Of a DNA stretch of 64,000 nucleotides, positions 798 to 24,950 are shown piece by piece. A program made the translations under genes and the position numbers. How positions within the stretch are numbered: position 1 is the first letter of the stretch; every line of letters begins with the position of its first letter. The notes under the pieces are model-generated. The model had not been told where the DNA came from. It did no database searches and saw only the letters and a list, made by a program, of their open reading frames with translations. The DNA lies in the IMG/VR virus record IMGVR_UViG_3300027985_000918, positions 62,001 to 126,000 of that record; one strand, given 5' to 3'.

Positions 798-3254
798 GTG
801 AGAGCTTTGGTGCAAGACCGGACGATGCAGACGAGTCGGAACCACCGGGCTGCCTCGTTCGGCATCGACATGGAGAGCCAGGCCCATCTAGCGATGGTCC
901 TCCGGGATTCCATCTATTCCGACAAGATCTTGGCGGTCTTGCGGGAGTATGGATCGAACGCCTGGGATGCCCACAGGGAGGTTGGGAAGGACGATCTCCC
1001 GATTGAGATTCACATCCCCACGGCCATGAAGCCAGAGCTGATCATCCGGGATCACGGCCCGGGGATGAGCCACTACATGGTGTTCTACCGCTACACCCAG
1101 TACGGAGCCTCTGGCAAACGGGACACCGACCGCCAGGTGGGGTTCCTGGGGCTGGGGTGCAAGTCGGGATTCGCCTACAATGACAGCTTCACGGTGACCT
1201 CCTGGCACAAGGGGGAGAAGCGGATCTACCTGGCCGTCCTTGACGATTCGGACATGGGCCAGATGCAGCTCCTGTATGCTGCCATGTACGGCGAGTTTGC
1301 ACGAGCCTATCTCACCCAGTTCAGCAACGGATCCGGCCCTCCGAGCCTCGTGGATGAGCTAGAGGATGGCGTCCTCATCAAGTCGGAACAGGTGTTCTCC
1401 GCCTGCCCAGAGGATTCCGGGTACTGGGCCAATGGCTATCAGGACTACATCGCTAACTGGTCTCCGGACCCCCGGTTCGAGGACGACGAGCCTCTTCCTT
1501 TCCTCCAGTGGGTGGAAGAAGACTTTTGGGGATGGGCCAGCACCTGTGAGCTGGAGCCCCCCGAAACAGGAATCGAGATCAAGCTGGCAGTCAAGGCCTC
1601 GGACGTGTGGTCCTTCCAGGACAAGGCGCAGAGCCTGTACCGCTACTATGTCCCCCAGCCCCGAATCAACATCAACCTGGCGGATCCCCCGAACCTTGTA
1701 CCTGGTGGGTTCCTCAACGAGAACGACCAGGGGCGCTGGATTGGGGTAATGGGGTGCAACTCGTATAAAATCGACATGCACCAGATCCAGAAAGATTTGG
1801 ACCGGGAAGGTCTTTGGCCTCTCCTCCAGAAGATCGGCGGAGGTATCTTCTTCGGGATCGGAGATGTGCAGTTCAATGCCTCTCGGGAAGAGTTGAAGTA
1901 CAGTGACTCGACGAAGGCCCGCATCGTCGAGGGGCTCAAACTTGTGGTGGACCAGTACATCGAGTCCATGCTGGCCTGCCTCCAGGGGGACACTATGTCC
2001 TCCTGGGAAAAGCGGAAGAAGGCCGTCTTCATGGCTGAGGACTTGGGCTTCCAGATCCCCGACGAGTACGCTCCCTGGCTCGCCAAAACCGTCAAGCTCT
2101 GGGGTCGCACGAAGGAAGGCCTGCCCGTGGGTCCCGATCAGCCCAAGTTGTTCACCCTGATCTCAGGCTCGGACTCCCGGACACCTCGACAGGGTGTCGA
2201 GGTGAACTCCGAGGCTAAGATCTACATTCGGGATAACGACCGGAATCTGAAAGGGTACCCCTATCTCAAGGCTCATCACGTCATCGCCGTGCCAACTGAA
2301 GCAGCTCGCAGGGATGGGGCTTTCGACTTGGAAGGGGTTCAGTCCGAGATCGAAAAGTACCTGGAGGCCGCTGATCTGGCGGGTTTCCCCATCGGAAAGC
2401 TGTCCGACATGTACTGGGACGAAGTCTACGTCCCGGAAAAATCGGGTAGGGCGAAATGGGCCCAGGCCAAGAACCCCAAGCACAGCAAGCGGACCTTCGT
2501 GTTCAACCCAGAGGATCACACCTGGTTCGGGTCTCCTTTCTCGGAATACTGGAAGGCCGAAAACCGAGTCCCCGAGGACACGGACGTCTTCGTGGTCCTG
2601 GATCGGTTCGAGAGTTACGGCTACGGCAAGGACAACTTTTACAACCTCTTCAAGGAGGACAGAGGGCTAGCCGCCACTCTCGGGCTGAAGATGCCCCCGG
2701 TATATGGGTACAAGACCACCACGAAGAAGCCGGTGGAGCCCGAAGACTGCACGGGGACCTACTACTACGACTGGCGTCTGAAGTTCTTCGGGGACTTCCT
2801 GACCCAGCACCACTACAAGGTGCTCGCCTGTGAGAACTGGCTGCGTGAAGCTCCCTACAACGTTCGGGCAGGGCACACCCAACTCCGTCGCCTGGTGGGT
2901 GAGTTGTGTCGGGGCCTGGGACAGAGTCACCCGGCCACCAGGTTCTACGCTCAGGTGATGCGGTCCCAGGAGTTTCTGGAGTCGAAGGGGGATAGGTTCC
3001 GGGACAGCACCTACGAGCTATTCAGGGTGGCGAAGGCGTTCTGCCTGGTTTCCGGGCAGCCCACCCCCAAAGTACCCGATAACGTTCGGGCGACGAAGAG
3101 TAGATCTGCTGTGGCGGATCTAGACCCCAAGTACCCTTTGCTTAAGGTAGCCCGGACGAACATGCTGGAAGCCCTTTCGGGACCCGAAAGGAAATACTGG
3201 ATTGAGTACATCCGCTTGGTAGATGCCAACAGAAAGAGTGGGGACAACCAATGA
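798..3254 (+). CDS. rIIA: rIIA-like protein (GHKL/HSP90-like ATPase N-domain)
   Basis: LREYGSNAWDAH, IRDHGPGM, GFLGLGCKS, FTVTSW GHKL motifs; overlaps rIIB-like gene by ATGA; start may be ATG 825. Confidence 0.85.
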   Translation: MRALVQDRTMQTSRNHRAASFGIDMESQAHLAMVLRDSIYSDKILAVLREYGSNAWDAHREVGKDDLPIEIHIPTAMKPELIIRDHGPGMSHYMVFYRYTQYGASGKRDTDRQVGFLGLGCKSGFAYNDSFTVTSWHKGEKRIYLAVLDDSDMGQMQLLYAAMYGEFARAYLTQFSNGSGPPSLVDELEDGVLIKSEQVFSACPEDSGYWANGYQDYIANWSPDPRFEDDEPLPFLQWVEEDFWGWASTCELEPPETGIEIKLAVKASDVWSFQDKAQSLYRYYVPQPRININLADPPNLVPGGFLNENDQGRWIGVMGCNSYKIDMHQIQKDLDREGLWPLLQKIGGGIFFGIGDVQFNASREELKYSDSTKARIVEGLKLVVDQYIESMLACLQGDTMSSWEKRKKAVFMAEDLGFQIPDEYAPWLAKTVKLWGRTKEGLPVGPDQPKLFTLISGSDSRTPRQGVEVNSEAKIYIRDNDRNLKGYPYLKAHHVIAVPTEAARRDGAFDLEGVQSEIEKYLEAADLAGFPIGKLSDMYWDEVYVPEKSGRAKWAQAKNPKHSKRTFVFNPEDHTWFGSPFSEYWKAENRVPEDTDVFVVLDRFESYGYGKDNFYNLFKEDRGLAATLGLKMPPVYGYKTTTKKPVEPEDCTGTYYYDWRLKFFGDFLTQHHYKVLACENWLREAPYNVRAGHTQLRRLVGELCRGLGQSHPATRFYAQVMRSQEFLESKGDRFRDSTYELFRVAKAFCLVSGQPTPKVPDNVRATKSRSAVADLDPKYPLLKVARTNMLEALSGPERKYWIEYIRLVDANRKSGDNQ

Positions 3255-4450
3255 GCACACCTTCCATCGACGACTACACCATCACCGGCCAGTCCGTCAC
3301 AGTCATCGTGAACGGTGAGCCGATCACGACCACCCGGACGGCAGCCAACTTCGAGGCCCTGCGGGCGGCATGCCTGTCCTATGGTGATGCCGAGGAGGAG
3401 ACGGCCCAGGACGAAGCGGCTCAGGCCATCTGCAAGGCCCTCTCCATCCCGACGCTGGTCCAGTCCTGGGCCAACGGGGAGTGGGCCGAGGGAACTTGGT
3501 TTGAGGTTCAGGGGGAGCGTATCACTTGGCAGGGGGAGCCGGTGGATGAGGCCATCTCCCGCCGCATCCTGGAGCTGGTGGCAGAGAACCGGAACCCCAG
3601 GGGGTTCGCCCAGTTTTGGCTGCGGCTGTGTGCCAACCCGAGCCCTCGCTCGACGGCTCAGCTCTACCCGTTCCTGAACCACCTGGGTATCCCTATCGTG
3701 TTCGTGGGAGACCCGAGGTACGACGGCTGCTTCCTCGCCTACAAGGGGGTTACGGCCGAATACAAAGACGTCCACACGGGGACCATCGACAACCGCCCCG
3801 GTGCCTCCCCCCGAATGCTCCGGGAGAACATCTCGGACGATCCCAACACGGCGTGTCACCAGGGGTTTCACGTAGGTGCCCTGGGGTACGCCAAGAGCTT
3901 CGGCCAGCGGGTGATTATCTGCCTGGTGGACCCCAAAGATGTGGTCAGCATCCCCTACGACCACACGCACCAGAAGATGCGGGTCGAGGGATACACGGTC
4001 ATCGGGTACTGGAACGGCGAAAGTTTGCCGTCCACCTATGTCACCCGGGAAGACATTCCGTTCCTCGACTTCAGCAACCCGGGCAAGGAAATCTCCTCCG
4101 CTGTCCCCTCGGACTACAAGGGGGAGCCGGGTGACGACTGGGACGACGACGAGGAAGAGGACGACTGGGACGACGACGAGGAAGAGGACGACTGGGACGA
4201 GGGGGTCTTGAAGGTCGAGGAGGACCCCAACTCCTTCGCCAACTCGGGCGAGAGTACCCTGGAGCCGGGGGAGCCGGAGGTGGGTTTCTACAATCTCCTC
4301 GACACCCTGGGGTACGAGGATCTGGTGACCTACACGACGGAACACCTCCGCAAGTACGCCACGTACCGGGTGAACATCGTCGGGGCCAGCAAGATCCACG
4401 GCGGTAAGAACGCCCTGGTCAACCTGATCTTGGAGACCCGTCCCGTCTGA
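3251..4450 (+). CDS. rIIB: rIIB-like protein with acidic linker and extra C-terminal domain
   Basis: FLAYKGV...DDPNTACHQGFHVG...VDPKDVVSIPYD..QKMRV rIIB core, directly after rIIA. Confidence 0.85.
   Translation: MSTPSIDDYTITGQSVTVIVNGEPITTTRTAANFEALRAACLSYGDAEEETAQDEAAQAICKALSIPTLVQSWANGEWAEGTWFEVQGERITWQGEPVDEAISRRILELVAENRNPRGFAQFWLRLCANPSPRSTAQLYPFLNHLGIPIVFVGDPRYDGCFLAYKGVTAEYKDVHTGTIDNRPGASPRMLRENISDDPNTACHQGFHVGALGYAKSFGQRVIICLVDPKDVVSIPYDHTHQKMRVEGYTVIGYWNGESLPSTYVTREDIPFLDFSNPGKEISSAVPSDYKGEPGDDWDDDEEEDDWDDDEEEDDWDEGVLKVEEDPNSFANSGESTLEPGEPEVGFYNLLDTLGYEDLVTYTTEHLRKYATYRVNIVGASKIHGGKNALVNLILETRPV
4133..4200 (+). repeat. 27-bp tandem repeat x2.5 encoding DDWDDDEEE
   Basis: GACGACTGGGACGACGACGAGGAAGAG at 4133 and 4160, partial at 4187. 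Confidence 0.9.
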
Positions 4451-7989: not shown

Positions 7990-8535
7990 TCAGGGGCAAG
8001 GTTCCAGAGACACGGCCGGAACGTAGACTCTGCCGTCAGGGGCCGCCAGTTCCTCAATCAGCGGACCCTTCACTGCGCTGACGTAGGAGAACACCGCCTT
8101 GGCGATGGCCTTGTCTTCGCAGGACACATCTTTCCCCTCCATGACCAGCAGCGTGATGGACTCGACCGCCGGCAGGATGCTGCCGGATAGAGCGTCAACA
8201 AGCGCCTTCGCATCGGCCTCCAGAACTGGCTCCATCGGGCTCTCCTGAAGAACCAGGCAGGAGTTGATGTCCACCTCCACACTGGGGATGACTCCGGTGG
8301 CCTCGCCTTTGGCCCATCCGTCTACGGCACTCTGAGCCGCCCCGATAGCCGTCAGGAACGAAGAAGTGACGTAGCAGGCTACCACGTTTCTGTCCGCCAC
8401 GGACAGGGCCTTACCCGCTTCGGTCACGCCTTTGGCTCCGATCAGAGACGAGTCGATGATCGGCAGATACTTCTGGGTTGAGCCACAACCGAGCAAGAGC
8501 CCAGCCAGAAGCAGAGTTGCAAACAGCTTCTGCAT
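7990..8535 (-). CDS. lipoprotein
   Basis: MQKLFATLLLAGLLLG-C signal peptide with lipobox; GGAGG RBS before ATG 8535. Confidence 0.75.
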   Translation of the reverse strand: MQKLFATLLLAGLLLGCGSTQKYLPIIDSSLIGAKGVTEAGKALSVADRNVVACYVTSSFLTAIGAAQSAVDGWAKGEATGVIPSVEVDINSCLVLQESPMEPVLEADAKALVDALSGSILPAVESITLLVMEGKDVSCEDKAIAKAVFSYVSAVKGPLIEELAAPDGRVYVPAVSLEPCP

Positions 8536-8614
8536 TGGATTAACCTCCCTCCCACGACGAGAGATCCGCCTCTCGTCCAACTCATAGGGGCAATAGGCAC
8601 TCCACCGAGAGCAC

Positions 8615-8680: not shown

Positions 8681-9118
8681 ATGAGTGATCGTTGTCAGAA
8701 GCTGGCTGACTCGTTCTTTGGCCCCGGAGGGGTGTTCGATGGCACGTTTCCTCCTCCTGAGGTCACCAAGGGAGGGCCGCTCGATGCTCTGTTCGCCCCT
8801 CCGAAGGTCACCAGGTTCTTTGGTGGGGAGCCGGGGTTGAAGGTCTTCCCCACGAAAGCTGCCTACGAGGTCGAGATCGATCTCCCGGGTCGGGTCAGGG
8901 ATGACGTGACCGTTGATATCTCCGGCAACAAGCTGTACGTCAAGGTTGCGGCTACTGGCAGCCGGAACCCCCGCCCTGAGAAGACATGGGTGTTTGATCT
9001 CGGGACGGAATACGACCCCGAAGGGACCACCGCTCTCTTGGAGAAGGGTGTGCTTTCCCTCAGAGTCCCCCGCCTGAAGACTGCTGATCCTCCTCGTTTC
9101 CGCATCACGGTCGGGTAA
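8681..9118 (+). CDS. small heat shock protein (Hsp20/alpha-crystallin)
   Basis: YEVEIDLPG..DDVTVDISGNKLYV...ALLEKGVLSLRVPR. Confidence 0.85.
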   Translation: MSDRCQKLADSFFGPGGVFDGTFPPPEVTKGGPLDALFAPPKVTRFFGGEPGLKVFPTKAAYEVEIDLPGRVRDDVTVDISGNKLYVKVAATGSRNPRPEKTWVFDLGTEYDPEGTTALLEKGVLSLRVPRLKTADPPRFRITVG

Positions 9119-9139
9119 CGAGCCTCAGAGTTAAGGGGA

Positions 9140-9175
9140 GGATCCACACGGGGGCCTTCTCCCCCGTGTGGATCC
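9140..9175. terminator. hairpin terminator
   Basis: GGATCCACACGGGGG-loop-CCCCCGTGTGGATCC between convergent genes. Confidence 0.7.
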
Positions 9176-9307
9176 TGGATGGTGGGGAACCCCCTCCACC
9201 ATGAGTACAGAGCCCTCAGAGGGATTACCCCAACCCTGCTAAATGATAGACTCTTGGCCTCCTGCCCAGGTAGGCCTGCATTGGGGGTTAGTTTGAGCAG
9301 TTGGGGG

Positions 9308-9718
9308 CTACGGAAGGGTGCGGATGAGTTCTTCGTTCTTCGGACCGGGGACTACTCCAGCCTTCAGACACCTCTCCCAGTCGGATAGGACCGCCTCGAA
9401 GTCCTCCTCTGGCATGTCAGTGAGTCCAGGGCAATCGAACATCCTCCGAAGATTGAGGACATCCATCACGTCCTTGAACTTGATAGTGTCGTGTTCGGTG
9501 CTTCCGATGGGCCTGGAGTTCAGCACCATCCTATTCGTGACAGGCGGGGTTGCAGCCCAGTCGAGGCTCGAACGGGGCCGGCGGAGGAACACTTGCCGTC
9601 TACTGCCGAAGGTGTAGACGTATCCGAACCCCACTCGGAGGTTGTAGTACAGCCTCAGAAGCTCTCCGTCCTGTCGATAGCCGGTAATTCTGTTCACTCT
9701 GTTTCCTCCTTCAAGCAC
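9308..9718 (-). CDS. hypothetical protein
   Basis: 136-aa ORF; motif at 9724-9749; true start may be the GTG after GGAGG RBS. Confidence 0.7.
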   Translation of the reverse strand: MLEGGNRVNRITGYRQDGELLRLYYNLRVGFGYVYTFGSRRQVFLRRPRSSLDWAATPPVTNRMVLNSRPIGSTEHDTIKFKDVMDVLNLRRMFDCPGLTDMPEEDFEAVLSDWERCLKAGVVPGPKNEELIRTLP

Positions 9719-9744: not shown

Positions 9745-10386
9745 TTACCTAACTTCCAGGAGGGAATCCAAGTTCACACGCTCATCGTCCTGGATGTGGA
9801 CGGGTTCACCATCTTTCAGCACCCAACCGTACTCTAGGGGGGCCAGCCCCAACAGGGGCTGGCCCTTCCTCAAGACAGGACCTTCCAGTCCTTCTCTGCA
9901 CTTCACATAGTAGGCCAATGAGGCGGGGACCGGGATGTAAGTCTCCGAGAGACCACTGTTCTCACACCACTTGGAGATGGGGGTGTTCATGAAGCGGAGG
10001 ACCGCAGTGTGGGGTACCACAATCGCCCACTCCCACCGATGATCGAAAAGGACATACACACACCCCCGGGAGAGATCCCCCGCCTCAATGGCTTTCCTCT
10101 GCTCGATGTGGATGGTGTCGAAACTGAAGTTGCCGTCCGTCCAGGAGTCCCTCCACTTCGAGTCGTCCATCCCCTTGCGGGCCAGCTCTACCCCATATGT
10201 CCCGTCGAGAGATAGCAGGTCGATGCCGTAGCGGTCGGGATTGTCACGAAGCTGGATGCGGTCGAGCCCGAAGATCTCTTTGACCGCCTTCCGCAACTGC
10301 GGGGAATCCGCATAGGCCCTCCGAGCCTGAGGGTCGTTGGTCCGGAAGGCCGAGTCCTCGAACCTCTTGTTCTGGTGGATCTTCAC
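9745..10386 (-). CDS. putative PD-(D/E)xK-like nuclease
   Basis: DNPDRYGIDLLS...VELARK...W...FDTIHIEQRK resembles restriction-endonuclease-fold phage proteins. Confidence 0.5.
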   Translation of the reverse strand: MKIHQNKRFEDSAFRTNDPQARRAYADSPQLRKAVKEIFGLDRIQLRDNPDRYGIDLLSLDGTYGVELARKGMDDSKWRDSWTDGNFSFDTIHIEQRKAIEAGDLSRGCVYVLFDHRWEWAIVVPHTAVLRFMNTPISKWCENSGLSETYIPVPASLAYYVKCREGLEGPVLRKGQPLLGLAPLEYGWVLKDGEPVHIQDDERVNLDSLLEVR

Positions 10387-11057
10387 TCCACTGGCTCCAG
10401 CCGAACCCGTAGGACCACCCGGTGAGTCCAGGAATGCTCCGCCTCGTCTGTCTCGTGATAGAACCGCAGGTCGAACGGACGATTGGTCACCGGGTACGAC
10501 AGGTACTGGGAGGACAGATCCATGGTGAGCGTCTCCCCACAGTGAGGGCAGTCACTGGTGACAGTGATGGGGAGGTAGGTCCTCTTGGACAGTTCGATCT
10601 CCCCGTCGTTGTTCTCGATGGCCACCTTGGGACTCAACTCGTCTCGGATTCGCATCAAGATCTCCCCAAGCTGGTTACGCCCTACCCCAGTGGAGAGGTC
10701 CACCCCCCAGTACAGATCCCCCCAAGTATTGCCCTCCCGCAACTCCCGAGACCCTGTCGCCAGCAGAGCCTCACCTAGGTCCGGGTGCTGGGTGAACTTG
10801 GCCTTGCACACCTCGTACATGACCTGGGCCTTGATGTCCTCCCAGTCCGGCCGGAGGGTGCAGCGCCTCCCATTATGCTTGGACTCTTGGCAGGTTGCCG
10901 AGTTGCGGATCAGCTCATGCTCCGCCTCGATGACGGTCTTGGCAGCCTGGAAGGCATGCTCCGTTGAAGGGTAGGTTTTCCCGTTCCACTCGATAGGGGC
11001 TTCCCAGAAGTTGGAGAGCCAGCGGGTCGGGCCACGAAACTCGTTGATAGGCTTCAT
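10383..11057 (-). CDS. NADAR (YbiA-like) domain protein with C-terminal extension
   Basis: LSNF, YPSTEHAFQAAK, KFTQHPDL, LLATG, EGNTWGDLYWG, GRNQLGEILMRIR. Confidence 0.9.
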   Translation of the reverse strand: MKPINEFRGPTRWLSNFWEAPIEWNGKTYPSTEHAFQAAKTVIEAEHELIRNSATCQESKHNGRRCTLRPDWEDIKAQVMYEVCKAKFTQHPDLGEALLATGSRELREGNTWGDLYWGVDLSTGVGRNQLGEILMRIRDELSPKVAIENNDGEIELSKRTYLPITVTSDCPHCGETLTMDLSSQYLSYPVTNRPFDLRFYHETDEAEHSWTHRVVLRVRLEPVE

Positions 11058-11178: not shown

Positions 11179-11655
11179 TTACGGGAACAGAAGGTGCTTT
11201 CGCCCAATGAGGGCTTCCCAGGCCGAGGCGGACTGCTCTGCTGTCCGGGGTTCCATCCCCACGACGTGCCAAACCACCTCTGAGTCCCACTCCCCCCAGT
11301 AGTCCTGGGAGCAGGAGTAGGACATCTCGACCCAGAAGGCCTGGCCGGGGGAGATACCCTTCTGCAAGAGGAAGGTCTCCAGCTCGGAGATCAGCCCGAA
11401 AGGGCAGGTGTTCATCCCTAGAACCCCGTCAAGGTTTCCCAGAGCGTCTAGCTCGTAGCCCAGCCAGTGCTGAGGGGGGGCCCCCTCTCCATCGATCTCC
11501 AGAGTCAAAGACCCCCACTCCCAACTCTCCGCCGCCACCAGGCGGACCATGCACCAGGAGTTTCCCCAGATGCCACAGTCGTTCACTACGGGACACTTGA
11601 ATGGCTCAAGGGGTTCTGAGTCCATGCCCACCAGGGTGATGTTGAAGCGTTTCAT
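11179..11655 (-). CDS. hypothetical protein
   Basis: 158-aa ORF in minus-strand run. Confidence 0.7.
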   Translation of the reverse strand: MKRFNITLVGMDSEPLEPFKCPVVNDCGIWGNSWCMVRLVAAESWEWGSLTLEIDGEGAPPQHWLGYELDALGNLDGVLGMNTCPFGLISELETFLLQKGISPGQAFWVEMSYSCSQDYWGEWDSEVVWHVVGMEPRTAEQSASAWEALIGRKHLLFP

Positions 11656-12034
11656 GAATGAACCTCATCTTGGCGGCATCACCGTCGGTGACCCAAAACC
11701 GAACCCCCAACGGAATCCACTCGAACCTCAGACCCGGGAACCTTCTCCGAGGGACATCGTGGGTGAACTTCACACCCGAACCCCCCGTGTACCTGTCGAT
11801 GAACCGTAGCCTAGCCCCCTGGAACAAGGTGGTGTCCCGGTAGTCCCGCCACCGCACCAACGCCGGCCAATACACCGCCGGAGATGCCGTAGACCCCCTC
11901 AAGGCCTGAAGGACAGGCGGAGGCTCCATATCGAACATCTCAGCCATCCGCCGATTCCCCTTGCACAGGTAGAGCTTGAACTCCCACGGACGGGTTAGGC
12001 GGACTAAGACGCCCGGCTGAGGTTCAATCGCCAC
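11606..12034 (-). CDS. hypothetical protein
   Basis: 142-aa ORF, motif at 12117-12142. Confidence 0.6.
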   Translation of the reverse strand: MAIEPQPGVLVRLTRPWEFKLYLCKGNRRMAEMFDMEPPPVLQALRGSTASPAVYWPALVRWRDYRDTTLFQGARLRFIDRYTGGSGVKFTHDVPRRRFPGLRFEWIPLGVRFWVTDGDAAKMRFIHETLQHHPGGHGLRTP

Positions 12035-12149
12035 TGGGGGGCTCGTCCCACTGGGTCTTGTGCCATTCCGACCGGGACTGGTTCACAGAAAGAACTCCTC
12101 TGGAGGTACTGGAGAGATACTCGAATCTGCGTGGGTGTTACCCGGGGAC

Positions 12150-12655
12150 CCGGCGACGGAGCCCACTTGTTAGGGGTTCAGAGGATCAGAGGACTGGCTC
12201 AACCGAGAGGGGTCTATCACCCCTGATAGCGGGGAGGCCCCCGCTACCCTATCAGCCAGCCCCGTCGCCGGGATCCGGTGCCTGTCGCACATTGAGGCCC
12301 CTGCCGGCAGCCGCAGAGGTAGGAGGTCCCCCGCTTTATGAGCCCCCGGGTGAGAGGAGCAGCACCCGAGGACACAAAGCGGAGGGGGTCGGGGGGCACA
12401 TGTGCGAGGTGCTGAGTACCAGCCTGTTGGACACAGGAACAACAGGCCCTACCCTGGGAGGTCTTGCGTGGACCTCTACCAGATACCCCTGACCGATGCA
12501 AAACGGGATCACCCGTAGTTCTTCTTGCTCAAGACGGCGGAGATGCTACCCCCACCCTTATTTCTCAGAGGGGTTGCGGCCGGGACCCTTGGGTGATCCA
12601 TTCTACCCGGGGCCCGGCCGCAATGGGTACTTCGCCTTATCCGTGTTCTGGGGGC
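12150..12655. ncRNA. candidate structured non-coding RNA
   Basis: No credible ORF; multiple hairpins and crossing helices (see findings). Confidence 0.4.
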
Positions 12656-12662
12656 CGCAGCC

Positions 12663-13265
12663 TCAGTTGATGTTGTACTGGACCTTGGCGCCGGGAAGCC
12701 CAGCGAAGATGTCTTCGCCTTCCTGGGCTGCGGCGACGGGCTGGTTCCTGTCGTCCCCCTGAGCCGGGCTCACGCCCAGGGATGCGAGCCCCTCGTCCTT
12801 CATGATGTCCGAGGCGATGCTCCCGTCCGGGTCCTCGATGCCCAGAGCTTCCTTCATGATGAGGCTGAGCGTCTTCTGCAAGGTCCGGGCCAGGATCTGT
12901 TCCTGGAAACTGGACATGGCGGGGGTGCTGTCGTAGATCGTGTCCTGGTAGCGCTGGTACATCGGGGACTGGATCATCGGCAGCAGCTCGGCCAGATCGG
13001 CCTCGGTTAGATGGGCGCAGTACACGGGCGCCATGCTGTCCAGGAAGCCCGGGTACAGCTCCACCATGGCGTTCTCGATGATCCCGCCGATCTGATCCAT
13101 CATGAACGAGAAGTCCTCGGCGGCCGGCACCAAGACCTGCTCGGCCTGGAACCGCAACTGGACCATGGCCCTGACCAGGTGCCTGAGACGATCCTCGGAG
13201 TACGTGGCCTCCAGCACCGTCCTGGCGGCCTTGATGTGCTCCTGGGTGTATTCGCTGTTGTTCAT
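12663..13265 (-). CDS. DUF2059-like protein
   Basis: YCAHLTEADLAELLPMIQSPMYQRY resembles DUF2059 pattern; motif at 13316-13341. Confidence 0.5.
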   Translation of the reverse strand: MNNSEYTQEHIKAARTVLEATYSEDRLRHLVRAMVQLRFQAEQVLVPAAEDFSFMMDQIGGIIENAMVELYPGFLDSMAPVYCAHLTEADLAELLPMIQSPMYQRYQDTIYDSTPAMSSFQEQILARTLQKTLSLIMKEALGIEDPDGSIASDIMKDEGLASLGVSPAQGDDRNQPVAAAQEGEDIFAGLPGAKVQYNIN

Positions 13266-13336: not shown

Positions 13337-13792
<456 letters not shown>

Positions 13793-16632: not shown

Positions 16633-16757
16633 CCTCGGTCCTCCTTCGCTGTACACACCCCCTACTTGGCTGACCTAAGGGGGTTACCTTCAGGAGCGAA
16701 AAATTAATCCGGCGAAAAATGCGGGTCCGACGGGATGCCAAAAGAAAACGAAGAGTT

Positions 16758-17024
16758 TTAGCGGCCGGTTGTACTCAGGTGAGACGACTCAGGGGGCAGT
16801 CTGGAAGACCTCTCTTGACGGTACTCCATCACCGTCATGTTCCCGCTCGCCCCCACATACACCATGAACGTGCCCCAGTAGGATAGCACCGCCCCCAACA
16901 GGGCGTTTTCTAGGCTCGGGTGAAAGACGAGCAGGATCAGAAGCACCAGTAGGGGGACACCGTGGAAGAACGCTAGCCAACACCTAGCTCGGAACCGAAG
17001 GTTTTGGAAGTCGGCATCGGTCAT
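16758..17024 (-). CDS. small membrane protein
   Basis: 88 aa, two hydrophobic helices. Confidence 0.6.
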   Translation of the reverse strand: MTDADFQNLRFRARCWLAFFHGVPLLVLLILLVFHPSLENALLGAVLSYWGTFMVYVGASGNMTVMEYRQERSSRLPPESSHLSTTGR

Positions 17025-17250
17025 CGGATCGTCCTCTGGGGAGAAAACCCCGCTGGAATAGGGCTCGGGGAGTCGTTTTTGGGGGGGATGGGCACATCGC
17101 TACCCCCAAAGCAGACGCCCCCTGTGAGAGAAACTACCCTTCTCAGCGTTGATCCGAACCCTGTTGCCTTCGACAATGTCATTTTGGGTGCAGATTCAAT
17201 CCCCCGTCTGGAGGGCTGGCGGGGACCCGATCACCTTTTTTAAGCGGTTC

Positions 17251-17430
17251 TGGCACGGAGCTTGCACACACCCACCACCCCAGGTGGACACCCCGAGTCA
17301 CGGGGGGTGTGCAAGCTCCGTGCCACCCTTCAACAGGTAACCCAGGGCTTGCACCCCCACCCCCCTCAGGGTACACCCCAAGTATTGGTGGAGTGTGCAA
17401 GCCCTGGGCCACCCTTCAACAGGTAACCCA
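17251..17430. repeat. two long hairpins separated by a 23-bp direct repeat
   Basis: 19-bp perfect IR 17251-17269/17307-17325; 14-bp perfect IR 17341-17354/17395-17408; GCCACCCTTCAACAGGTAACCCA at 17322 and 17408. Confidence 0.85.
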
Positions 17431-17551
17431 CCAAAAGTTGTGCCAAGCTACTCTGTCCCGCAACTTGTTCCGTAGTACCTACTTGCGGAGCCCCTGAAGT
17501 TACCTCCCCCGGCGCTCCCAAGAACCCGTGGGGGGGCGCCGGGGGAGAGGC

Positions 17552-18232: not shown

Positions 18233-18386
18233 ACAGGACCTCCAGGTCAATGCGGTACCGGATATACTGGGGAGTAGGGGACTGTTACCCCCTTTCCGGC
18301 AGCCTTGGGAAGAGGCACCGCTGGTCTCTGAGCCTTGCGACAAGCCTACTGGCGAAGAGTGAGGGGGTTACCTCCCCCAAGAACGA

Positions 18387-18423
18387 CAACCCCCGCTCTG
18401 AGGCGATCCCAGAGCGGGGGTTG
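18387..18423 (-). terminator. hairpin terminator closing candidate ncRNA
   Basis: CAACCCCCGCTCTG-loop-CAGAGCGGGGGTTG. Confidence 0.7.
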
Positions 18424-19157
18424 AAGGGTGTCCGGCGTAGCAGGTTGAACGACGAAGGAGGACACAACGCCGGGGCACCAGCGGACTTAGGTAGCTTCTT
18501 GACACCTTGAGGGAGAGCACGCCAGGCCACTCAGGGAACCTTTTCCGACTTCTTCGGATCCTGAGTCAACCCGTCCGCCTTGGCTTCGGGGGACTGCGCT
18601 GCGGTGGTCCTCGGTTTCCCGAGATCCCCCTTGTGGGGGTCCCCACCGTCTCGACCCAGCTCCGGGAGCTACCCGTATGCCTCTTGTCGTCCGTCGGCTC
18701 CATGTACCCCTGCCTCCTGCCCTCTCAGGCAGAGGCTCCAGGGTGTAGGTTAAGATGGCTCAGAGGGGGCTTCAAAAGCCCACTCTGCCCCGCTTCAGAC
18801 TTCCCTTCTGCTTGCGGGGACCGTCCGGTCGTGGTCTATGCTAGGTTGTGGCTTGGCTGACGTCGCCCACCTCTACCCGTGGGGCTCTGTAGGGCTCTCC
18901 AGTTCACCGCTCGTCACGGATCCCTAGGACTGGTCCCGGGAGGGGTCAGCTCCCGTCCCCGGTTACTGGCCGGTGGACCTGGCTCTTTGGTTCAAGCCAC
19001 CCTACATTGTGTTCAGTCTTCCGGCTGCTCCTGGGGGTCTCAGCTTTCGCTCTCCCAGGCCCTGCTCTGCCTTCTTATGAAGGCAGTCCAGACAAGCCTG
19101 CCGTGCTCTCTCTCAAGCTGTCAAAGAGTGTGTCGGGGGTCTGTTCCCCTTCCACGC
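18387..19157 (-). ncRNA. candidate large structured ncRNA (~750 nt)
   Basis: Own motif at 19163-19189, terminator at 18387-18423, no credible ORF, 26/29-bp terminal pairing, internal hairpins. Confidence 0.6.
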
Positions 19158-19205
19158 TATAGCTACTCGAACCCGGGGGTGTTGTTACCACCCCACTAGC
19201 ACTTT

Positions 19206-19865: not shown

Positions 19866-19939
19866 GACACACCTACCAGTTAGGATCGTTCCCCGCACCT
19901 ACTAATGACTCCCCTGCTGTTACCACCCGCCAAGTAGGA

Positions 19940-19965
19940 GGTAACCCCAGCCCCTTGGCGAGTAG
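19940..19965 (+). promoter_or_regulatory. phage promoter-like motif
   Basis: GGTAAC-N15-AGTAG, back to back with 19899-19924. Confidence 0.7.
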
Positions 19966-20057
19966 GGGGAGTCGATAGCAACGAGGACCCCCCCACACGG
20001 CGGGATCCGAACACCACATCTGCCAAGGAGAAGAAGCATGCTGAAGTGAACCCGCAA

Positions 20058-20094
20058 GCCGTCCCGGCCCCCTCCGTCTACAGGCCGGGACGGC
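20058..20094 (+). terminator. hairpin terminator
   Basis: GCCGTCCCGGCC-loop-GGCCGGGACGGC followed by CCTTTG. Confidence 0.6.
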
Positions 20095-20194
20095 CCTTTG
20101 GGCCGGGTAACCTCCGACGTCTGTAGGTGAGGAGTCGGGTCCAGCCGCCAGGCTACCCCCGTTGGGATGGCCTTCCCTGCTCCTTACGCTCCAC

Positions 20195-20773
20195 CTACTG
20201 GTCAGGGGACAGGCGGTTACCTCGAAAATTGGGGGTAACACCCCCACACATGGCCAGTAGCCACCCCGTAAGGACCACCCCACCCCCCACCCCCGGCGGA
20301 TGCCGCCCCTTGCACCCTACCTACTTGTCAAGAGGGGCCTTGTTACCTTGAAAACTGGGGGTAACACCCCCACACATGGCCAGTAGCTACCCCGTAAGGA
20401 CCACTCCGAAGGCGGGGAGGGGCGGCATCCGCCCCTTGCACCCTATCTACTTGTCAAGAGGGGCCTTGTTACCTCGAAAATTGGGGGTAACAACCCCGCC
20501 CCTGCCGAGTAGTCTAGGAGTAAGGGGCGCCCCATAGGGAAACCGATGCGCCGCCCCCCATCCTGCCCCTTGCATTCCCTCTACTTGTCAAGGGGCAGGT
20601 GGTTACCTCGAAAATTGGGGGTAACACCCCCACACATGGCCAGTAGATACCCCGTAAGGACCACCCACGAAGGACCATCTACCCCGCACCCACTCCCTAC
20701 GCCCTATCTACTGGTCAATGAACAGGCTGTTACCTCGAAGATAGAGGGTAACACGGGTACCTCCGGCGAGTAG
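20195..20773. repeat. five tandem ~126-bp units, each with a 66-bp symmetric double promoter-like core
   Basis: CTACT-N16-GTTACC-N12-GGTAAC-N16-AGTAG starting at 20195, 20321, 20447, 20581, 20708. Confidence 0.9.
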
Positions 20774-20913
20774 ACCAGACGTAAGGAGCGTTCACCCCTT
20801 CGACTGCTGAGAGCGGGGTAACTTCGACCGGCAGATGAGTAGGTGTTTCGTAAGGAGTGACCTTGTGCTTTTCCTATTGGGGAGGGAGGAACCCCCCTCC
20901 CTGAGGGCCCCAG

Positions 20914-21244: not shown

Positions 21245-21610
21245 AACTTCGACCCCCACAACTCGAAACTTTGCCCTTCCGAAACTTTCAAGCCGAAACT
21301 TTCATCAAAGTTTCGGCAACTTGGCGGAAGTTTCGAGCTGGGGAGGTAACTAAGGCCTCTTGCCAAGTAGACACGGGGAACTTTGGAGAACCGCCACTAT
21401 GAAGGTCCCCAAGCCCGTTCCGGGATACCCGCTCACCTTGGAGTGCGGAGGCCCCCACCGATTCGAGTGGGGGCCTGGGGAAGCATGAACTTCGGCACCT
21501 AGAAGCCCTTTGAAAGTTTCAAAGGGCGCCCTAACGCCAAACTTTGAGTGTAGAAGTGCTCTTGAAAGTTTCGAGGACACTTCGGCACGCAAACTTTCGC
21601 AACTTTTCTG
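21245..21610. repeat. clusters of AAAGTTTC/GAAACTTT motifs
   Basis: Repeated in both orientations at 21245-21335 and 21490-21610. Confidence 0.75.
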
Positions 21611-22570: not shown

Positions 22571-22688
22571 AAACTTCCAAAGTTTCGACTTGAAAGTTTC
22601 GGGGGAGCGAAGTTTCGACTTGTGAGGGTCGAAGTTTCGACTTGAAAGTTTCGGGGGAGCAAAGTTTCGACTTGTGAGGGTCGAAGTT
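22571..22688. repeat. tandem AAGTTTCG array
   Basis: About 8 copies, incl. duplicated ~44-bp block, abutting motif at 22690-22715. Confidence 0.85.
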
Positions 22689-22744: not shown

Positions 22745-23020
22745 ATGAGCAGCACCATCATGGCCATCACGTGCGGACGCATGGGCTCTCGCATGGCAAA
22801 CGTCAAGAGGGGGAGAAGGACCCTGAGCTTCCCCATCTACAGCGTGAAGCTCTACGCCCTCCGGGAGAGGGCTGACGGAGTAAAGACCTGGCGTTTTGTC
22901 CGGCACCTGTCGGACGGGCACACCGTGTTCAGCACGGTGGAACGTCAAGCGGAACAAGAAGCCCTGCTGAAGGGGCTCAGCTTCGTTCCCAACCTCATCC
23001 ACGGGGCCAGGGCCTCATAG
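22745..23020 (+). CDS. hypothetical protein
   Basis: 91 aa, AAGGAGG RBS, motif at 22690-22715. Confidence 0.75.
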   Translation: MSSTIMAITCGRMGSRMANVKRGRRTLSFPIYSVKLYALRERADGVKTWRFVRHLSDGHTVFSTVERQAEQEALLKGLSFVPNLIHGARAS

Positions 23021-24136
23021 CTCCCCCTGCCACTGCCGGGCCTGTTCCCTCAGGTAGGTCAGGCCCCGGCTCACCGACGCTCTCGAAACCCCCAACTGCT
23101 CTGCGATCTCCGACCGAGTCATCCCAGCCGACACCATCGGGAGAATGGCTACCGCCATCTTCCCATCCTGCGTGTGGGACTTCTCCGACTCCCCCAGCCA
23201 CACCGTCAACGCCTCTTGGGCCTCCGCCATACCCTGGGCTTCCTCTGCCCCTGAGGGCTCCGCAGGGATGGTCTGACTGGAGGCCACGTCCATCAACCCA
23301 TAATCCCCGTCACCCCCATACCCCATCACCCCAGGGGACTCGAACTCCTTCCGGCGCTTCTGCTTCCGGTGGTAGTTGCTCAGGACCCCCTGACACACCA
23401 TGTGGACGTAGTGCCCGAAGGAGGACTTGCGGGCATCCCAAGGGCAGTGACCCTCATTCCGGGCCAGCAGACCTTTGTAGACCTCTTGGAGCACATCATC
23501 CGGGTCGTAACGGGCGGAGAAGATCCACTGCCCGAACCCAGCGAACAGCAACTTGGCGACCTCCTCCGCCCTGTTCACCAGATCGATCCCTAGCTCCGGG
23601 TTGTCGTCCAGTACCCCCTCGGCTACCACCAAGGCGGCCTGAGCGGCGTTCACCGATTCGGGGATCACGGTAACCAGAGCCTGCTCGCCAGTAGGCTCCA
23701 CGTAAGCCCCGCCCCTCTTACGGGGGGACTCCGTACCACGAGGGGTAACGCTGGCCGACTTCCGAGTAGCTGGGGTGTTGGGAGTCTGAGCCACACCGAA
23801 CTCGATCATGAGGTCGAGTCCAGGCTCACCCTTCGAGGCTGCCGGAGCGTGGCGGCCAATGCGGAAGTACCGCTCGAAGGTCCAATGACGATCGTGCCCG
23901 GTCAGGGCTAGGAGGAGCTGCCTCTTGGACGTGTAGACGACATGATCCCCCTCGGGAAGCACCAACACCAGGTGCTGGGGTGACCTAACCACCACCTCGT
24001 GGCTTCCGTCCATGTGACGGGCCCGAAGGCGAAGGGTCTCGCTGCTGTCAAGCGAGATCGACGCCGGGGTTCGCTTTTCTTCGGCGGAGGGTTCGATGTC
24101 AGTCTGGGGGCGGGTTTGATTTTTCGAGGGTTGCAA
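23015..24136 (-). CDS. ECF-like RNA polymerase sigma factor with N-terminal extension
   Basis: YDPDDVLQEVYKGLL...FGHYVHMVCQGVLSNYHRKQKRR (region 2), MTRSEIAEQLGVSRASVSRGLTYLRE (region 4 HTH); TTG 24136 follows GGAGGGAGG. Confidence 0.8.
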   Translation of the reverse strand: MQPSKNQTRPQTDIEPSAEEKRTPASISLDSSETLRLRARHMDGSHEVVVRSPQHLVLVLPEGDHVVYTSKRQLLLALTGHDRHWTFERYFRIGRHAPAASKGEPGLDLMIEFGVAQTPNTPATRKSASVTPRGTESPRKRGGAYVEPTGEQALVTVIPESVNAAQAALVVAEGVLDDNPELGIDLVNRAEEVAKLLFAGFGQWIFSARYDPDDVLQEVYKGLLARNEGHCPWDARKSSFGHYVHMVCQGVLSNYHRKQKRRKEFESPGVMGYGGDGDYGLMDVASSQTIPAEPSGAEEAQGMAEAQEALTVWLGESEKSHTQDGKMAVAILPMVSAGMTRSEIAEQLGVSRASVSRGLTYLREQARQWQGEL

Positions 24137-24189
24137 GTTACGTCCTCCCTCCGTACATCGGGATGTGCCGGAAGTTTCATCGTCCCGCA

Positions 24190-24218
24190 CTTCTACCACT
24201 TTCAGCCCCCAAGTGCAA
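24190..24218 (-). promoter_or_regulatory. possible host sigma70-type promoter of the sigma gene
   Basis: TTGCAC-N17-TAGAAG on minus strand. Confidence 0.4.
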
Positions 24219-24493
24219 GGAAACAGTAGGGCATCCCGCCCCCAAACGGGCGGGTCAACCCCCCTTCATAGCCCTAAAGTTCTGCAGGGGGAGTTTGGCT
24301 AAGGCCAGAACCGAAACTTTGGGGTGAACTTCGATGGTCTCAAAGTTTGCTGTGGGCTTCCCTGCCCCCTCGGAGAGGGGTGCCCTTCCCTCTCCAACCC
24401 CCCTTATCGAAGCAGCCCTCCAACTGGCTGTTGGCCCCCTTCAAGAGTGAGGAGTCAGCCGGCCGACCGAGTCCCGCCGTGTTGAAGAATCCA

Positions 24494-24519
24494 GGTAACC
24501 CGGACTCTCTTATGAGTAG
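24494..24519 (+). promoter_or_regulatory. phage promoter-like motif heading the paralog array
   Basis: GGTAAC-N15-AGTAG. Confidence 0.75.
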
Positions 24520-24564
24520 GCCTTTCAGGACGAAACCTCTTGTAAGTCCCAGAGGAGGCAACCC

Positions 24565-24950
24565 ATGAACACGAGTTAAGAACGGCATCGTGAGGCATTG
24601 AGAGGATGGGCCTGCTGTCGAGTGGTACCTCAACGGGAATCGGCATGAGTGAGGCGCCCCAGCCATTGAGGGGCCTAAACGGACTCAATGGCTGGGGCTG
24701 TGGGACGGACTCAATGGCTGGGGCTGTGGGATCGATCCCACACCGAGGTGATTCGGGAGGCAGCCATGAACATCTGGTAGGTCCAACACCAAAGGTTATA
24801 AAATCCCTGCTGGGCCGTTCGGGCCGTTGAAGGTGGTGGTTCTGAGGCCAGCTCCACCGTGAAGGCCCCCGGTTACGAGGGTGCCGACAGCTTCAAAGCG
24901 TGGTGGTCCCCTGGGGTCTGCACCCGAATCGAGGAGAAATCTGGCCGATG
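24565..24950 (+). pseudogene. decayed HREDGPA-repeat gene remnant(s)
   Basis: Fragments equivalent to EDGPAVEW, IDPTPEVIREAA, QLHREG, CTRIEE with stops/frameshifts; 26-bp tandem duplication 24679-24730. Confidence 0.75.

What the first reader, a model, noticed from the sequence alone, without database searches (positions are those of the whole stretch)
12150..12655. Second ORF-free ~500-bp region with crossing helices (pseudoknot)
Seen: TTGCGGCCGGG (12574-12584) pairs with CCCGGCCGCAA (12613-12623); GGATCACCC (12505-12513) pairs with GGGTGATCC (12591-12599), which lies in the loop of the first helix, so the helices cross. Further hairpins near 12222-12257 and 12424-12447. Overlapping ORFs look non-coding. 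Inference: structured ncRNA, ribozyme or regulatory leader, possibly processed from the upstream minus-strand transcript.
Basis: partly seen in the sequence, partly recalled or inferred. Interest (0 to 1): 0.6.

Follow-up and report, generated by a model that had tools for sequence, protein, structure and literature searches.

The report
Conserved structured RNA in jumbo phage

Summary
The window comes from a 402-kb jumbo phage assembled from a hydrothermal-vent metagenome. Positions 12035-12662 are truly non-coding: there is no codon periodicity and no codon-usage signal in any frame. They fold better than shuffled sequence (z -5.9 on the minus strand; coding controls -1.2 and +0.4).

They lie in a 207-nt spacer (12456-12662) that has no counterpart in related phages. 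A crossing pair that long arises in about 1% of shuffles.

The real signal lies beside them. An element of about 300 nt (12143-12447, minus-strand sense) has homologues in the only two related phage lineages I could find. The flanking genes there are unrelated to the window's. Two sequence blocks are 86-100% identical, while shared genes are about 65% identical at nucleotide level.

All three copies fold alike:
- a 5' hairpin;
- a core with an invariant 8-bp closing helix, a long hairpin whose sequence differs but whose structure is kept, and a small hairpin with a C-G to G-C swap;
- a second domain closed by a long helix.

No Rfam family matches. A newly recognised phage promoter motif sits directly upstream of the element in one relative and directly downstream of it in the window.

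Best reading: a new, single-copy structured RNA made from the gene-sense transcript. Its function is unknown and expression is untested.

The parts
12663..13265 (-). Upstream 200-aa orphan gene (stop TGA at 12663-12665). Its transcript probably runs into the non-coding region.
   Evidence: Strong codon signal. It finds only itself among 5.8 billion proteins. A weak promoter-motif site lies at 13341. No canonical hairpin-plus-U-tract terminator follows it on the minus strand.
12456..12662 (-). Spacer specific to this phage.
   Evidence: Helices. No similarity to relatives. In L008 only about 25 nt separate the upstream stop from the 5' hairpin. Promoter-like site scores 5.1 against 14 or more for good sites. 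Energy comparison.
12422..12447 (-). 5' hairpin (HP0) directly upstream of the conserved core. A hairpin occupies this position in all three lineages.
   Evidence: 8-bp exact stem. Folds of the roughly 300-nt elements show it in each lineage. In L011 the predicted transcription start falls at the start of this hairpin.
12274..12416 (-). Conserved core (domain 1). P1 is 12400-12407 paired with 12285-12292. P3 is a long variable hairpin, 12328-12385. P4 is a hairpin, 12298-12319. Block 1 is 12398-12412 and block 2 is 12280-12316.
   Evidence: blastn hits to L006/L011 and L008/L009. Alignments A1-A3. RNAalifold. Covariance model R1 scores 134.7 bits here and 140.5 and 153.5 in the relatives. Single copy in the genome. 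Pair counts.
12143..12272 (-). Domain 2: a branched domain closed by a long helix (12149-12162 with 12259-12272). It contains the hairpins 12223-12255 and 12209-12223.
   Evidence: Inverted repeat I3. Fold z -4.85. L011 and L008 each have a domain of 100-125 nt closed by a 15-20-bp helix at the same place, with different sequence.
12116..12142 (-). Phage-type promoter for the next gene: GGTAACA at 12142-12136, a 14-nt spacer, then AGTATC at 12121-12116.
   Evidence: PWM score 25.0. The motif family has 92 sites scoring 14 or more in the genome, against 6 on one strand of the reversed sequence. 78% of the sites scoring 12 or more are intergenic, and the seed sites listed point at a gene start mostly 30-100 nt away. 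The same motif is used in both relatives.
11606..12034 (-). Downstream orphan ORF. The start is uncertain (GTG 12034 or ATG 11946) and the codon signal is weak.
   Evidence: This exact sequence is not in the protein collection. Only itself in IMG/VR.

Best explanation
Positions 12143-12447 (minus-strand sense) encode a single-copy structured RNA of about 300 nt that belongs to a small, previously undescribed family. The family is shared by a clade of rIIA/rIIB-carrying jumbo phages.

The RNA is made as part of the gene-sense transcript of a variable block of small, mostly orphan genes. In the window it would come from read-through out of the 200-aa gene. In one relative it would start at a phage-type promoter placed directly in front of it.

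It folds into three parts:
- a 5' hairpin;
- a core in which an invariant 8-bp helix closes a junction carrying a long variable hairpin and a short conserved hairpin;
- a second domain closed by a long helix.

Shown: the region is non-coding, the sequence blocks and the fold are conserved, the orientation is constant, and there is one copy per genome. Inferred: that the RNA is made.

My most likely mechanism (inference) is a stable RNA, perhaps trimmed out of the longer transcript, that acts through sequence-specific recognition by a protein or another nucleic acid. The reasons are that its junction, loop and P1 nucleotides are invariant far beyond what folding alone needs, and that its neighbours differ in every lineage.

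For: 1. Non-coding.
2. Excess structure: z -5.95 against coding controls of -1.21 and +0.40. Domain 2 alone gives z -4.85.
3. Homologues exist in the only two related lineages found. L006/L011 has RIIA 52% identical; in L008/L009 the 196-aa anchor protein encoded at window 7990-8580 is 65% identical.
4. Block 1 is 15/15 identical in all three. Block 2 is about 86% identical between the window and the relatives, and 100% over about 45 nt between L011 and L008. Shared genes are 64-70% identical at nucleotide level, and the flanking genes are not homologous.
5. Each copy folds on its own into the same architecture.
6. RNAalifold gives 36 pairs, 6 of them with changes on both sides. These include the C-G to G-C swap next to the P4 loop.
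7. On the model alignment 88% of cells pair, against 40-50% when partners are slid by 1-3 columns. Six pairs show double changes against 1-3 in the slid controls.
8. Covariance model R1 scores 135-154 bits on the three lineages. It scores at most 15 bits on about 450 kb of unrelated phage DNA fetched by chance 15-mer matches.
9. The gene-sense strand is more stable than the antisense strand in all three: -167.4 vs -154.7, -135.2 vs -128.7, -149.8 vs -144.5 kcal/mol.
10. In L011 a consensus promoter scoring 25 lies about 35 nt upstream of the 5' hairpin and points into the element. No promoter-motif site points into it from the other strand in any lineage.
11. No canonical terminator lies between the upstream gene and the element, although such terminators exist elsewhere in this genome.
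Against: - Only three independent sequences exist, so covariation cannot reach statistical significance. P1 never varies, so it says nothing for or against pairing.
- For the 140-nt core alone the antisense strand folds slightly better. The core's fold z-scores are modest, -2.9 and -1.6.
- There is no expression evidence. No RNA run holds the sequence.
- The window and L008 have no good promoter of the known motif in front of the element.
- Sequence-invariant inverted repeats (TCGCACAT ... ATGTGCGA) would also fit a double-stranded DNA site.
- Domain 2 and the 5' hairpin share position and shape but cannot be aligned with confidence.
Confidence: 0.6

Rival explanations
1. The element acts in cis on its own transcript. 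It might be a processive antitermination RNA (like HK022 put or the B. subtilis EAR element), an RNase III-type processing site, or a stabilising structure inside the polycistronic early transcript. It would not be a free-standing RNA.
For: - It always lies inside a same-strand gene row, in the gene-sense orientation.
- In L011 it sits just downstream of a promoter.
- It contains 17-25-bp helices, P3 and the domain-2 stem, of the kind RNase III cuts. That RNase III cuts such helices is established knowledge.
Against: - There is one copy per genome, whereas processing sites usually recur.
- No canonical terminator lies downstream on the minus strand between 12143 and the end of the gene row near 9308 for an antiterminator to override.
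- In the window the next gene has its own promoter right after the element.
- About 300 nt in three domains is more than known put or EAR elements need (own knowledge).
Confidence: 0.2
2. One reading: the functional unit is an H-type pseudoknot at 12506-12623 (an 11-15-bp hairpin whose loop pairs with 12506-12514). It would be a ribozyme or a regulatory pseudoknot.
For: - Both helices are exact and they cross.
- A crossing pair with both helices 9 bp or longer appears in 1.4% of shuffles.
- The loop lengths (59, 2 and 9 nt) are sterically possible (inference from the coordinates).
Against: - The segment is absent from both related lineages. L008 has about 25 nt there, and L011 has a promoter.
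- The best fold on either strand uses nested alternatives instead.
- No Rfam ribozyme or pseudoknot family matches at E<10.
- The shuffle test was chosen after the pair was seen.
- The region is helix-rich overall, which raises the chance of crossings.
Confidence: 0.07
3. The conserved blocks are double-stranded DNA sites. They could be an inverted repeat bound by a phage regulator or nuclease, or the ends of a tiny mobile element. RNA folding would then be incidental.
For: - Block 1 contains the palindrome GCACATGTGC.
- The 8-nt box TCGCACAT recurs inverted 99-116 bp away, and both copies are invariant in sequence.
- The neighbouring genes are swapped between lineages, as happens around mobile or recombinogenic sites.
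Against: - The boxes are not enriched elsewhere in the genome: 6 and 4 copies on the two strands against 5.3 expected per strand, and the palindrome is unique.
- The element is single-copy.
- A DNA site would not need the hairpin between the boxes to be kept through wholesale sequence change, nor a C-G to G-C swap in P4.
- Conservation extends well beyond the repeat, across P4 and its flanks.
Confidence: 0.08
4. The whole gap is decaying DNA: a dead gene, or spacer with chance GC-rich hairpins and no function.
For: - Gene decay does occur in this clade. A non-coding gap in L006 holds a 43-aa fragment 67% identical to the window's NADAR protein.
- Other long non-coding gaps in this phage are also hairpin-rich, with z -6.0 and -4.6.
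- This reading may well be true of the 207-nt spacer 12456-12662.
Against: - It cannot explain blocks 86-100% identical across lineages whose proteins are 52-65% identical and whose flanking genes differ.
- No relative of any translated frame was found in viral, metagenome or genome collections.
- Indels between the blocks are not multiples of three.
Confidence: 0.05

Closest known systems
Orphan structured-RNA motifs predicted in phage and virus intergenic regions by comparative genomics (e.g. PMC10690425, 'over ten thousand candidate structured RNAs in viruses and phages')
   Same: It is a non-coding, conserved, structured intergenic element in phage genomes. It was recognised by conservation plus a kept fold, and it has no known function.
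   Different: I could not check whether this motif is among those candidates, because no supplement is held. It is absent from Rfam 15. Only three lineages are known, none of them cultured.
GOLLD and ROOL large non-coding RNAs of phages and prophages (Rfam RF01998, RF03087)
   Same: They are large, multi-domain RNAs carried by phages, independent of particular neighbouring genes, with unknown function.
   Different: No match to either model even at E<10. The element is about 300 nt rather than about 600-800 nt. It is not next to tRNA genes: the nearest tRNA is about 17 kb away in the genome.
Processive antitermination RNAs: HK022 putL/putR and the Bacillus EAR element (own knowledge)
   Same: They are structured RNAs in the sense strand of an operon, downstream of a promoter or between genes. 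The fold matters, and the flanking genes are not what they regulate specifically.
   Different: The put elements are about 70 nt with two stem-loops, while this is about 300 nt in three domains. No downstream terminators were found. There is no sequence or model similarity (Rfam).
   Same: Two exact helices cross at 12506-12623.
   Different: They are not conserved, the predicted best fold does not use them, and they lie outside the conserved element. A different candidate tertiary pairing sits inside the core: the P4 loop UGCC with GGCA/GGCG just 3' of P1. It is possible in all three lineages, but it is only 4 bp and untested.

Membership tests
Any Rfam 15 family (4227 models) | Score at or above the family's gathering threshold | tested here: not met
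   Whole window: 0 matches. Region 11900-12800 at E up to 10: only 14-16-bit noise against thresholds of 38-50. L008 copy: none. L011 copy: only miRNA-hairpin noise at 15-23 bits against 68-100.
New phage RNA family proposed here (model R1) | Homologous copies in independent lineages with strongly conserved sequence blocks | tested here: met
   Three lineages score 135-154 bits, against at most 15 bits on about 450 kb of control phage DNA. Blocks are 86-100% identical while genes are 64-70% identical.
New phage RNA family proposed here (model R1) | Base pairs supported by compensatory change | tested here: inconclusive
   Six of 36 pairs show changes on both sides, and 88% of cells pair against 40-50% in slid controls. 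With n = 3, P1 invariant and the P3 alignment poor, this is not statistically decisive.
New phage RNA family proposed here (model R1) | Transcribed as RNA in the predicted sense | not testable with these tools
   No RNA run holds the sequence. There are only indirect cues: promoter placement in L011, strand asymmetry of folding energy, and constant orientation.
GOLLD / ROOL | Match to the family model; size 500-800 nt; frequent adjacency to tRNA genes | tested here: not met
   No model match. The element is about 300 nt. No tRNA lies in the window, and the nearest in the genome is at 57.2 kb against the element at 74.2 kb.
Intrinsic (factor-independent) terminator | GC-rich hairpin followed directly by a U tract on the transcribed strand | tested here: not met
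   The consensus scan listed no terminator-like site on the minus strand inside 12035-12662. By eye the best there is a 5-bp stem followed by UUUUG at 12516-12503. The 15-nt hairpin is followed by CCCCUCUG. Clear terminators with U tracts do exist elsewhere in the genome, e.g. 7966-7940.
H-type pseudoknot as a functional unit | Two crossing helices that are both kept in related sequences | tested here: not met
   The crossing helices are present, but the segment has no homologue in either relative, and nested folds compete.
Group I / group II intron | Match to the intron core models; flanking ORFs that read as the exons of one gene | tested here: not met
   No intron model matches at E<10. The flanking ORFs are separate orphans with their own stop and promoter.
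Protein-coding gene (including recoded stop codons) | Codon periodicity and codon-usage signal in one frame; an open frame under a code the genome supports | tested here: not met
   Flat GC phase. LLR is about 0 in all six frames even when stops are ignored, and every minus frame has TAA and TGA as well as TAG. The genome's CUA-anticodon tRNA could not open any of them.
put/EAR-type processive antiterminator | Lies between a promoter and terminators that it overrides; binds RNA polymerase | tested here: inconclusive
   It is downstream of a promoter in L011, but no canonical terminators lie downstream in the window. Polymerase binding cannot be tested here.

The most novel reading that the evidence does not exclude
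The element founds a new class of phage RNA with an activity of its own. One possibility is a self-cleaving or self-processing ribozyme, whose invariant junction, loop and P1 nucleotides form the active core, with a loop-to-tail tertiary pairing. Another is an RNA that disarms a host defence or reprogrammes RNA polymerase. It sits among genes of the counter-defence type: rIIA/rIIB and NADAR in the window; SIR2 in L006 and L008, GmrSD-N in L011.
Probability: 0.15. Interest if true: 0.75.

Novelty: new member of a known kind. Interest (0 to 1): 0.45.

Why it matters
Jumbo phages normally pack genes tightly, so long non-coding stretches that survive are candidates for RNA-level functions, which are poorly charted in these viruses. 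This one is kept across lineages that have exchanged all the surrounding genes, which argues for a function independent of its neighbours. It comes with a covariance model and a defined promoter motif (GGTAAC[A/C], 14-15 nt, AGTAG). That motif can be used to annotate transcription units in this uncultured clade. If the RNA proves to be catalytic or a counter-defence molecule, it would add a new class. If not, it is one more orphan phage RNA motif, of which thousands are already predicted.

Tried and rejected
Searches that found nothing:
- Direct similarity searches with the region or its flanks found only the phage itself: GenBank phages, IMG/VR via the flanking proteins and RIIA, the word search with the 200-aa protein, and 90% clusters.
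- Translated-frame searches of the region found no relative in metagenome contigs, IMG/VR or prokaryote genomes. This also argues against a hidden or decayed gene.
- Exact-pattern scans with the conserved blocks: IMG/VR returned only self for the combined patterns. The 53 chance 15-mer hits all failed the covariance model. Prokaryote genomes gave 0.
- More distant relatives were fetched through RIIA (L014) and through a profile of the 427-aa anchor family (L015-L021). Most of those contigs (1.7-11 kb) are too short to reach the region, and L014's gene order has diverged; none holds the element.

Ideas considered and rejected:
- A repeated element within the genome: none.
- tRNA or tmRNA in the window: none.
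- Sigma-70-type promoters: none above chance.
- Genome-wide DNA-box enrichment for the conserved boxes: none.
- Stop-codon recoding as a way to open a frame: rejected.

Practical failures:
- Two attempts at a genome-wide z-score background timed out. They were replaced by a 200-nt sliding scan and by matched controls. That scan shows that a few coding windows also reach z -4 to -5, so z-scores alone would not have been decisive.
- Sequencing runs: only DNA contigs from the probable source sample were found, so expression could not be assessed.

Full report
**Where this is.** The window is bases 62001-126000 of IMGVR_UViG_3300028422_000919. This is a 402,383-bp phage contig with direct terminal repeats, about 61% G+C. 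The only runs that hold it are hydrothermal-vent metagenome runs or runs from the same data set. It carries rIIA and rIIB at 798-4450. The genome has 30 tRNA genes, none of them in the window. The flagged interval lies in a row of small minus-strand genes. The 200-aa gene at 12663-13265 is upstream and an ORF at 11606-12034 is downstream. Both are orphans.

**Checking the observation.**
- The two helices are real. The 15-nt hairpin is 12574-12588 / 12609-12623, with an exact 11-bp core.
- The exact 9-bp pair is 12506-12514 / 12591-12599. Its 3' arm lies in the loop of the first hairpin, so the two cross.
- The other hairpins are at 12223-12255 and 12422-12447.
- The interval is non-coding by two independent measures. 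G+C is flat over the three codon phases from 12000 to 12600, while the flanks reach 0.8-0.9 in one phase.
- A codon-usage score trained on the phage's long ORFs averages about 0 per codon in all six frames, against 0.21 +/- 0.06 for genes. The best local ORF scores +2.2.
- The genome has a tRNA with anticodon CUA. Every minus frame also carries TAA and TGA, so reading TAG through opens nothing.

**Is the structure more than chance?**
- The 628 nt fold at -299 kcal/mol on the minus strand, z -5.95. The plus strand gives z -3.64.
- Two coding stretches of the same length and strand give z -1.21 and +0.40.
- In 1000 dinucleotide shuffles an exact helix of 11 bp or more appears in 4%, and two are observed. 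A crossing pair of two helices of 9 bp or more appears in 1.4%.
- That test was chosen after the fact. A 200-nt sliding scan shows a few coding windows also reach z -4 to -5.
- The 9-bp helix is worth about -16 kcal/mol, but it competes with nested pairs, and the best folds do not use it.
- So the region is hairpin-rich beyond its composition, but the pseudoknot itself is not established.

**A promoter motif that organises the region.**
- Intergenic k-mer enrichment led to a two-part motif: GGTAAC[A/C], then 14-15 nt, then [A/G]GTAG.
- A position-weight scan finds 92 sites scoring 14 or more in the genome, against 6 on one strand of the reversed sequence. Of the 98 sites scoring 12 or more, 78% are intergenic. 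The seed sites listed mostly point at a gene start 30-100 nt away.
- One strong site (score 25.0) lies on the minus strand at 12142-12116.
- The gap therefore reads as: stop codon, about 520 nt of non-coding sequence, promoter, 5' leader, next gene.
- No site scoring 10 or more lies at the 5' end of the 520 nt or on the plus strand. The best is a degenerate GGTAGCA-N14-AGCAAG at 12550, scoring 5.1.
- Canonical terminators (GC hairpin plus U tract) exist in this phage, but none follows the 200-aa gene. Its transcript therefore probably runs on into the gap.

**Finding relatives.**
- Direct searches with the region and its flanks returned only the phage itself.
- RIIA gave one clearly closer relative at 52% identity, on a 32.9-kb Logan contig (L006/L011). 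It has the same gene order around rIIA, rIIB, a 421-aa gene and HSP20, and it uses the same promoter motif.
- A low-stringency blastn of the gap against that contig gave two colinear hits inside one of its own non-coding gaps: 37 nt at 86% identity and 15 nt at 100%.
- The conserved 196-aa neighbour encoded at 7990-8580 led to a third lineage, seen in four assemblies (L008, L009, L010 and one without DNA). Its copy lies in the 388-nt gap where synteny predicted one.
- The genes flanking the element are unrelated in the three lineages and have no homologue in the window's genome.

**The conserved element.** Read in the sense of the flanking genes, all three lineages share two blocks.
- Block 1 is CACCUCGCACAUGUG.
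- Block 2 runs from CUG[C/G]GGCUGCCG[G/C]CAGGGG through CAAUGUGCGACAGGC.
- L011 and L008 are identical over about 45 nt of block 2, although their shared genes are only 69-70% identical at nucleotide level.

Each copy folds on its own into the same shape.
- P1 pairs UCGCACAU with AUGUGCGA. In the window this is 12400-12407 with 12285-12292.
- P3 is a 60-75-nt irregular hairpin whose sequence is essentially unalignable between lineages.
- P4 is a short hairpin. The two variable letters of block 2 are its loop-closing pair: C-G in the window, G-C in the others.
- RNAalifold returns 36 pairs, six of them with changes on both sides.
- On the model-based alignment 88% of cells pair, against 40-50% with partners slid by 1-3 columns. 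Six pairs show double changes against 1-3 in the slid controls.
- With three sequences this supports the fold but does not prove it.

Other features:
- Covariance model R1 scores 134.7 bits in the window (12274-12416), 140.5 in L006/L011 and 153.5 in L008/L009. It finds one copy in the whole genome.
- On about 450 kb of unrelated phage DNA pulled in by chance 15-mer matches it never exceeds 15 bits.
- Directly 5' of the core each lineage has a hairpin (12422-12447 in the window).
- Directly 3' each has a 100-125-nt domain closed by a 15-20-bp helix of different sequence. In the window this is 12143-12272, with z -4.85.
- For the full element of about 300 nt the gene-sense strand is more stable than its complement in all three lineages. 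For the 140-nt core alone the reverse holds by a few kcal/mol.
- In L011 a consensus promoter lies just upstream, so the predicted start falls at the 5' hairpin.
- In L008 and in the window the element follows a small gene that has such a promoter in front of it.
- No Rfam family matches any of the three copies.

The crossing helices lie in 12456-12662, between the upstream stop codon and the 5' hairpin. L008 has about 25 nt at that place, and L011 has the end of a gene plus a promoter. The segment has no detectable homologue. It may carry a 3' hairpin for the upstream message and a decayed promoter, but nothing marks it as a functional pseudoknot. A different candidate tertiary contact exists inside the core: UGCC in the P4 loop with GGCA or GGCG just 3' of P1. 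It is possible in all three lineages, but it is only 4 bp, and I treat it as a lead.

**Mechanism.**
- Shown: the region is non-coding; sequence blocks and fold are conserved across lineages with swapped neighbours; the orientation is constant; there is one copy per genome; and the promoters are placed so that sense transcription is expected.
- Inferred: the element is an RNA. I favour a stable, possibly processed RNA recognised sequence-specifically by a partner. Its P1, junction and loop nucleotides are invariant while P3 and domain 2 keep only their shape, and no particular downstream gene goes with it.
- The cis-acting readings (antitermination, processing, stabilisation) remain possible. 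They are weakened by the single copy, by the absence of downstream terminators, and by the promoter that separates the element from the next gene in the window.
- A double-stranded DNA site is the main non-RNA rival. It is weakened by the kept hairpins and by the absence of further boxes in the genome.

**Limits.**
- There are three lineages, and none is cultured.
- There are no RNA data.
- The contig laid over the region probably comes from the source sample.

Noticed in passing
genome-wide; in the window e.g. 9749(-), 12142(-), 15444(-), 17504(-), 19189(-), 21243(-), 22690(+): A phage-specific two-part promoter-like motif: GGTAAC[A/C], 14-15 nt, [A/G]GTAG. There are 92 sites scoring 14 or more, against 6 on one strand of the reversed sequence. 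Of the sites scoring 12 or more, 78% are intergenic; the seed sites point at gene starts. The same motif is used in both related phage lineages (L006/L011, L008). A gene with weak sigma-factor similarity lies at 23015-24199.
   Followed up: partly
window 20216-20666 (array extends to about 20180-20790, inside the non-coding gap 19866-20913): About 3.5-5 tandem units of 126 bp. Each carries two back-to-back copies of the promoter motif, one on each strand. This array of divergent promoter-like sites has no genes between them. Purpose unknown.
   Followed up: partly
window 16633-17551, 18233-19205, 24200-24899: Further long gaps without codon signal in the same gene row. Two are highly structured (z -6.0 and -4.6). 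The gap 18233-19205 begins with a strong promoter site at 19189(-), so about 800 nt of non-coding RNA may be made. The gap 16633-17551 holds an 86-nt hairpin repeated twice (17260-17430). No Rfam match anywhere in the window.
   Followed up: partly
window 16758-17024 (-): An 88-aa ORF with a hydrophobic, membrane-protein-like sequence, inside what my crude gene caller treated as non-coding. It is probably a real small gene.
   Followed up: no
window 21272-21307, 21513-21565, 22580-22688, 24320: Clusters of the box AAAGTTTCG (and GAAACTTTC) around the divergent promoters where the minus-strand and plus-strand gene blocks meet. They look like operator sites for a regulator.
   Followed up: no
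G000:C1:158402-158477 (complement), outside the window: A tRNA with anticodon CUA (an amber suppressor; ARAGORN labels it Pyl) among the phage's 30 tRNA genes. The others cluster at 9-14.4 kb, 46-49.4 kb and 57.2 kb of the genome. I did not examine whether late genes use in-frame TAG.
   Followed up: no
window 10383-11057 (-); L006 19094-19222: A NADAR-domain protein lies two genes downstream of the element. In the relative L006 a 43-aa fragment 67% identical to it sits inside a 1.1-kb stretch with no called gene, apparently a decayed copy.
   Followed up: partly
L016 2901-5992: A 9.7-kb metagenome contig carries a distant homologue of the 427-aa anchor protein. It also encodes Cas6 and a Cas3-like helicase-nuclease just downstream, so it may be a phage-borne CRISPR-Cas fragment.
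   Followed up: no
window 9119-9307: A convergent intergenic region between the HSP20-like gene (8681-9118, +) and the end of the minus-strand row. It contains a perfect 16-bp GC-rich hairpin (about 9141-9176) and a second hairpin, with z about -4. It is probably a bidirectional terminator without a clear U tract.
   Followed up: no
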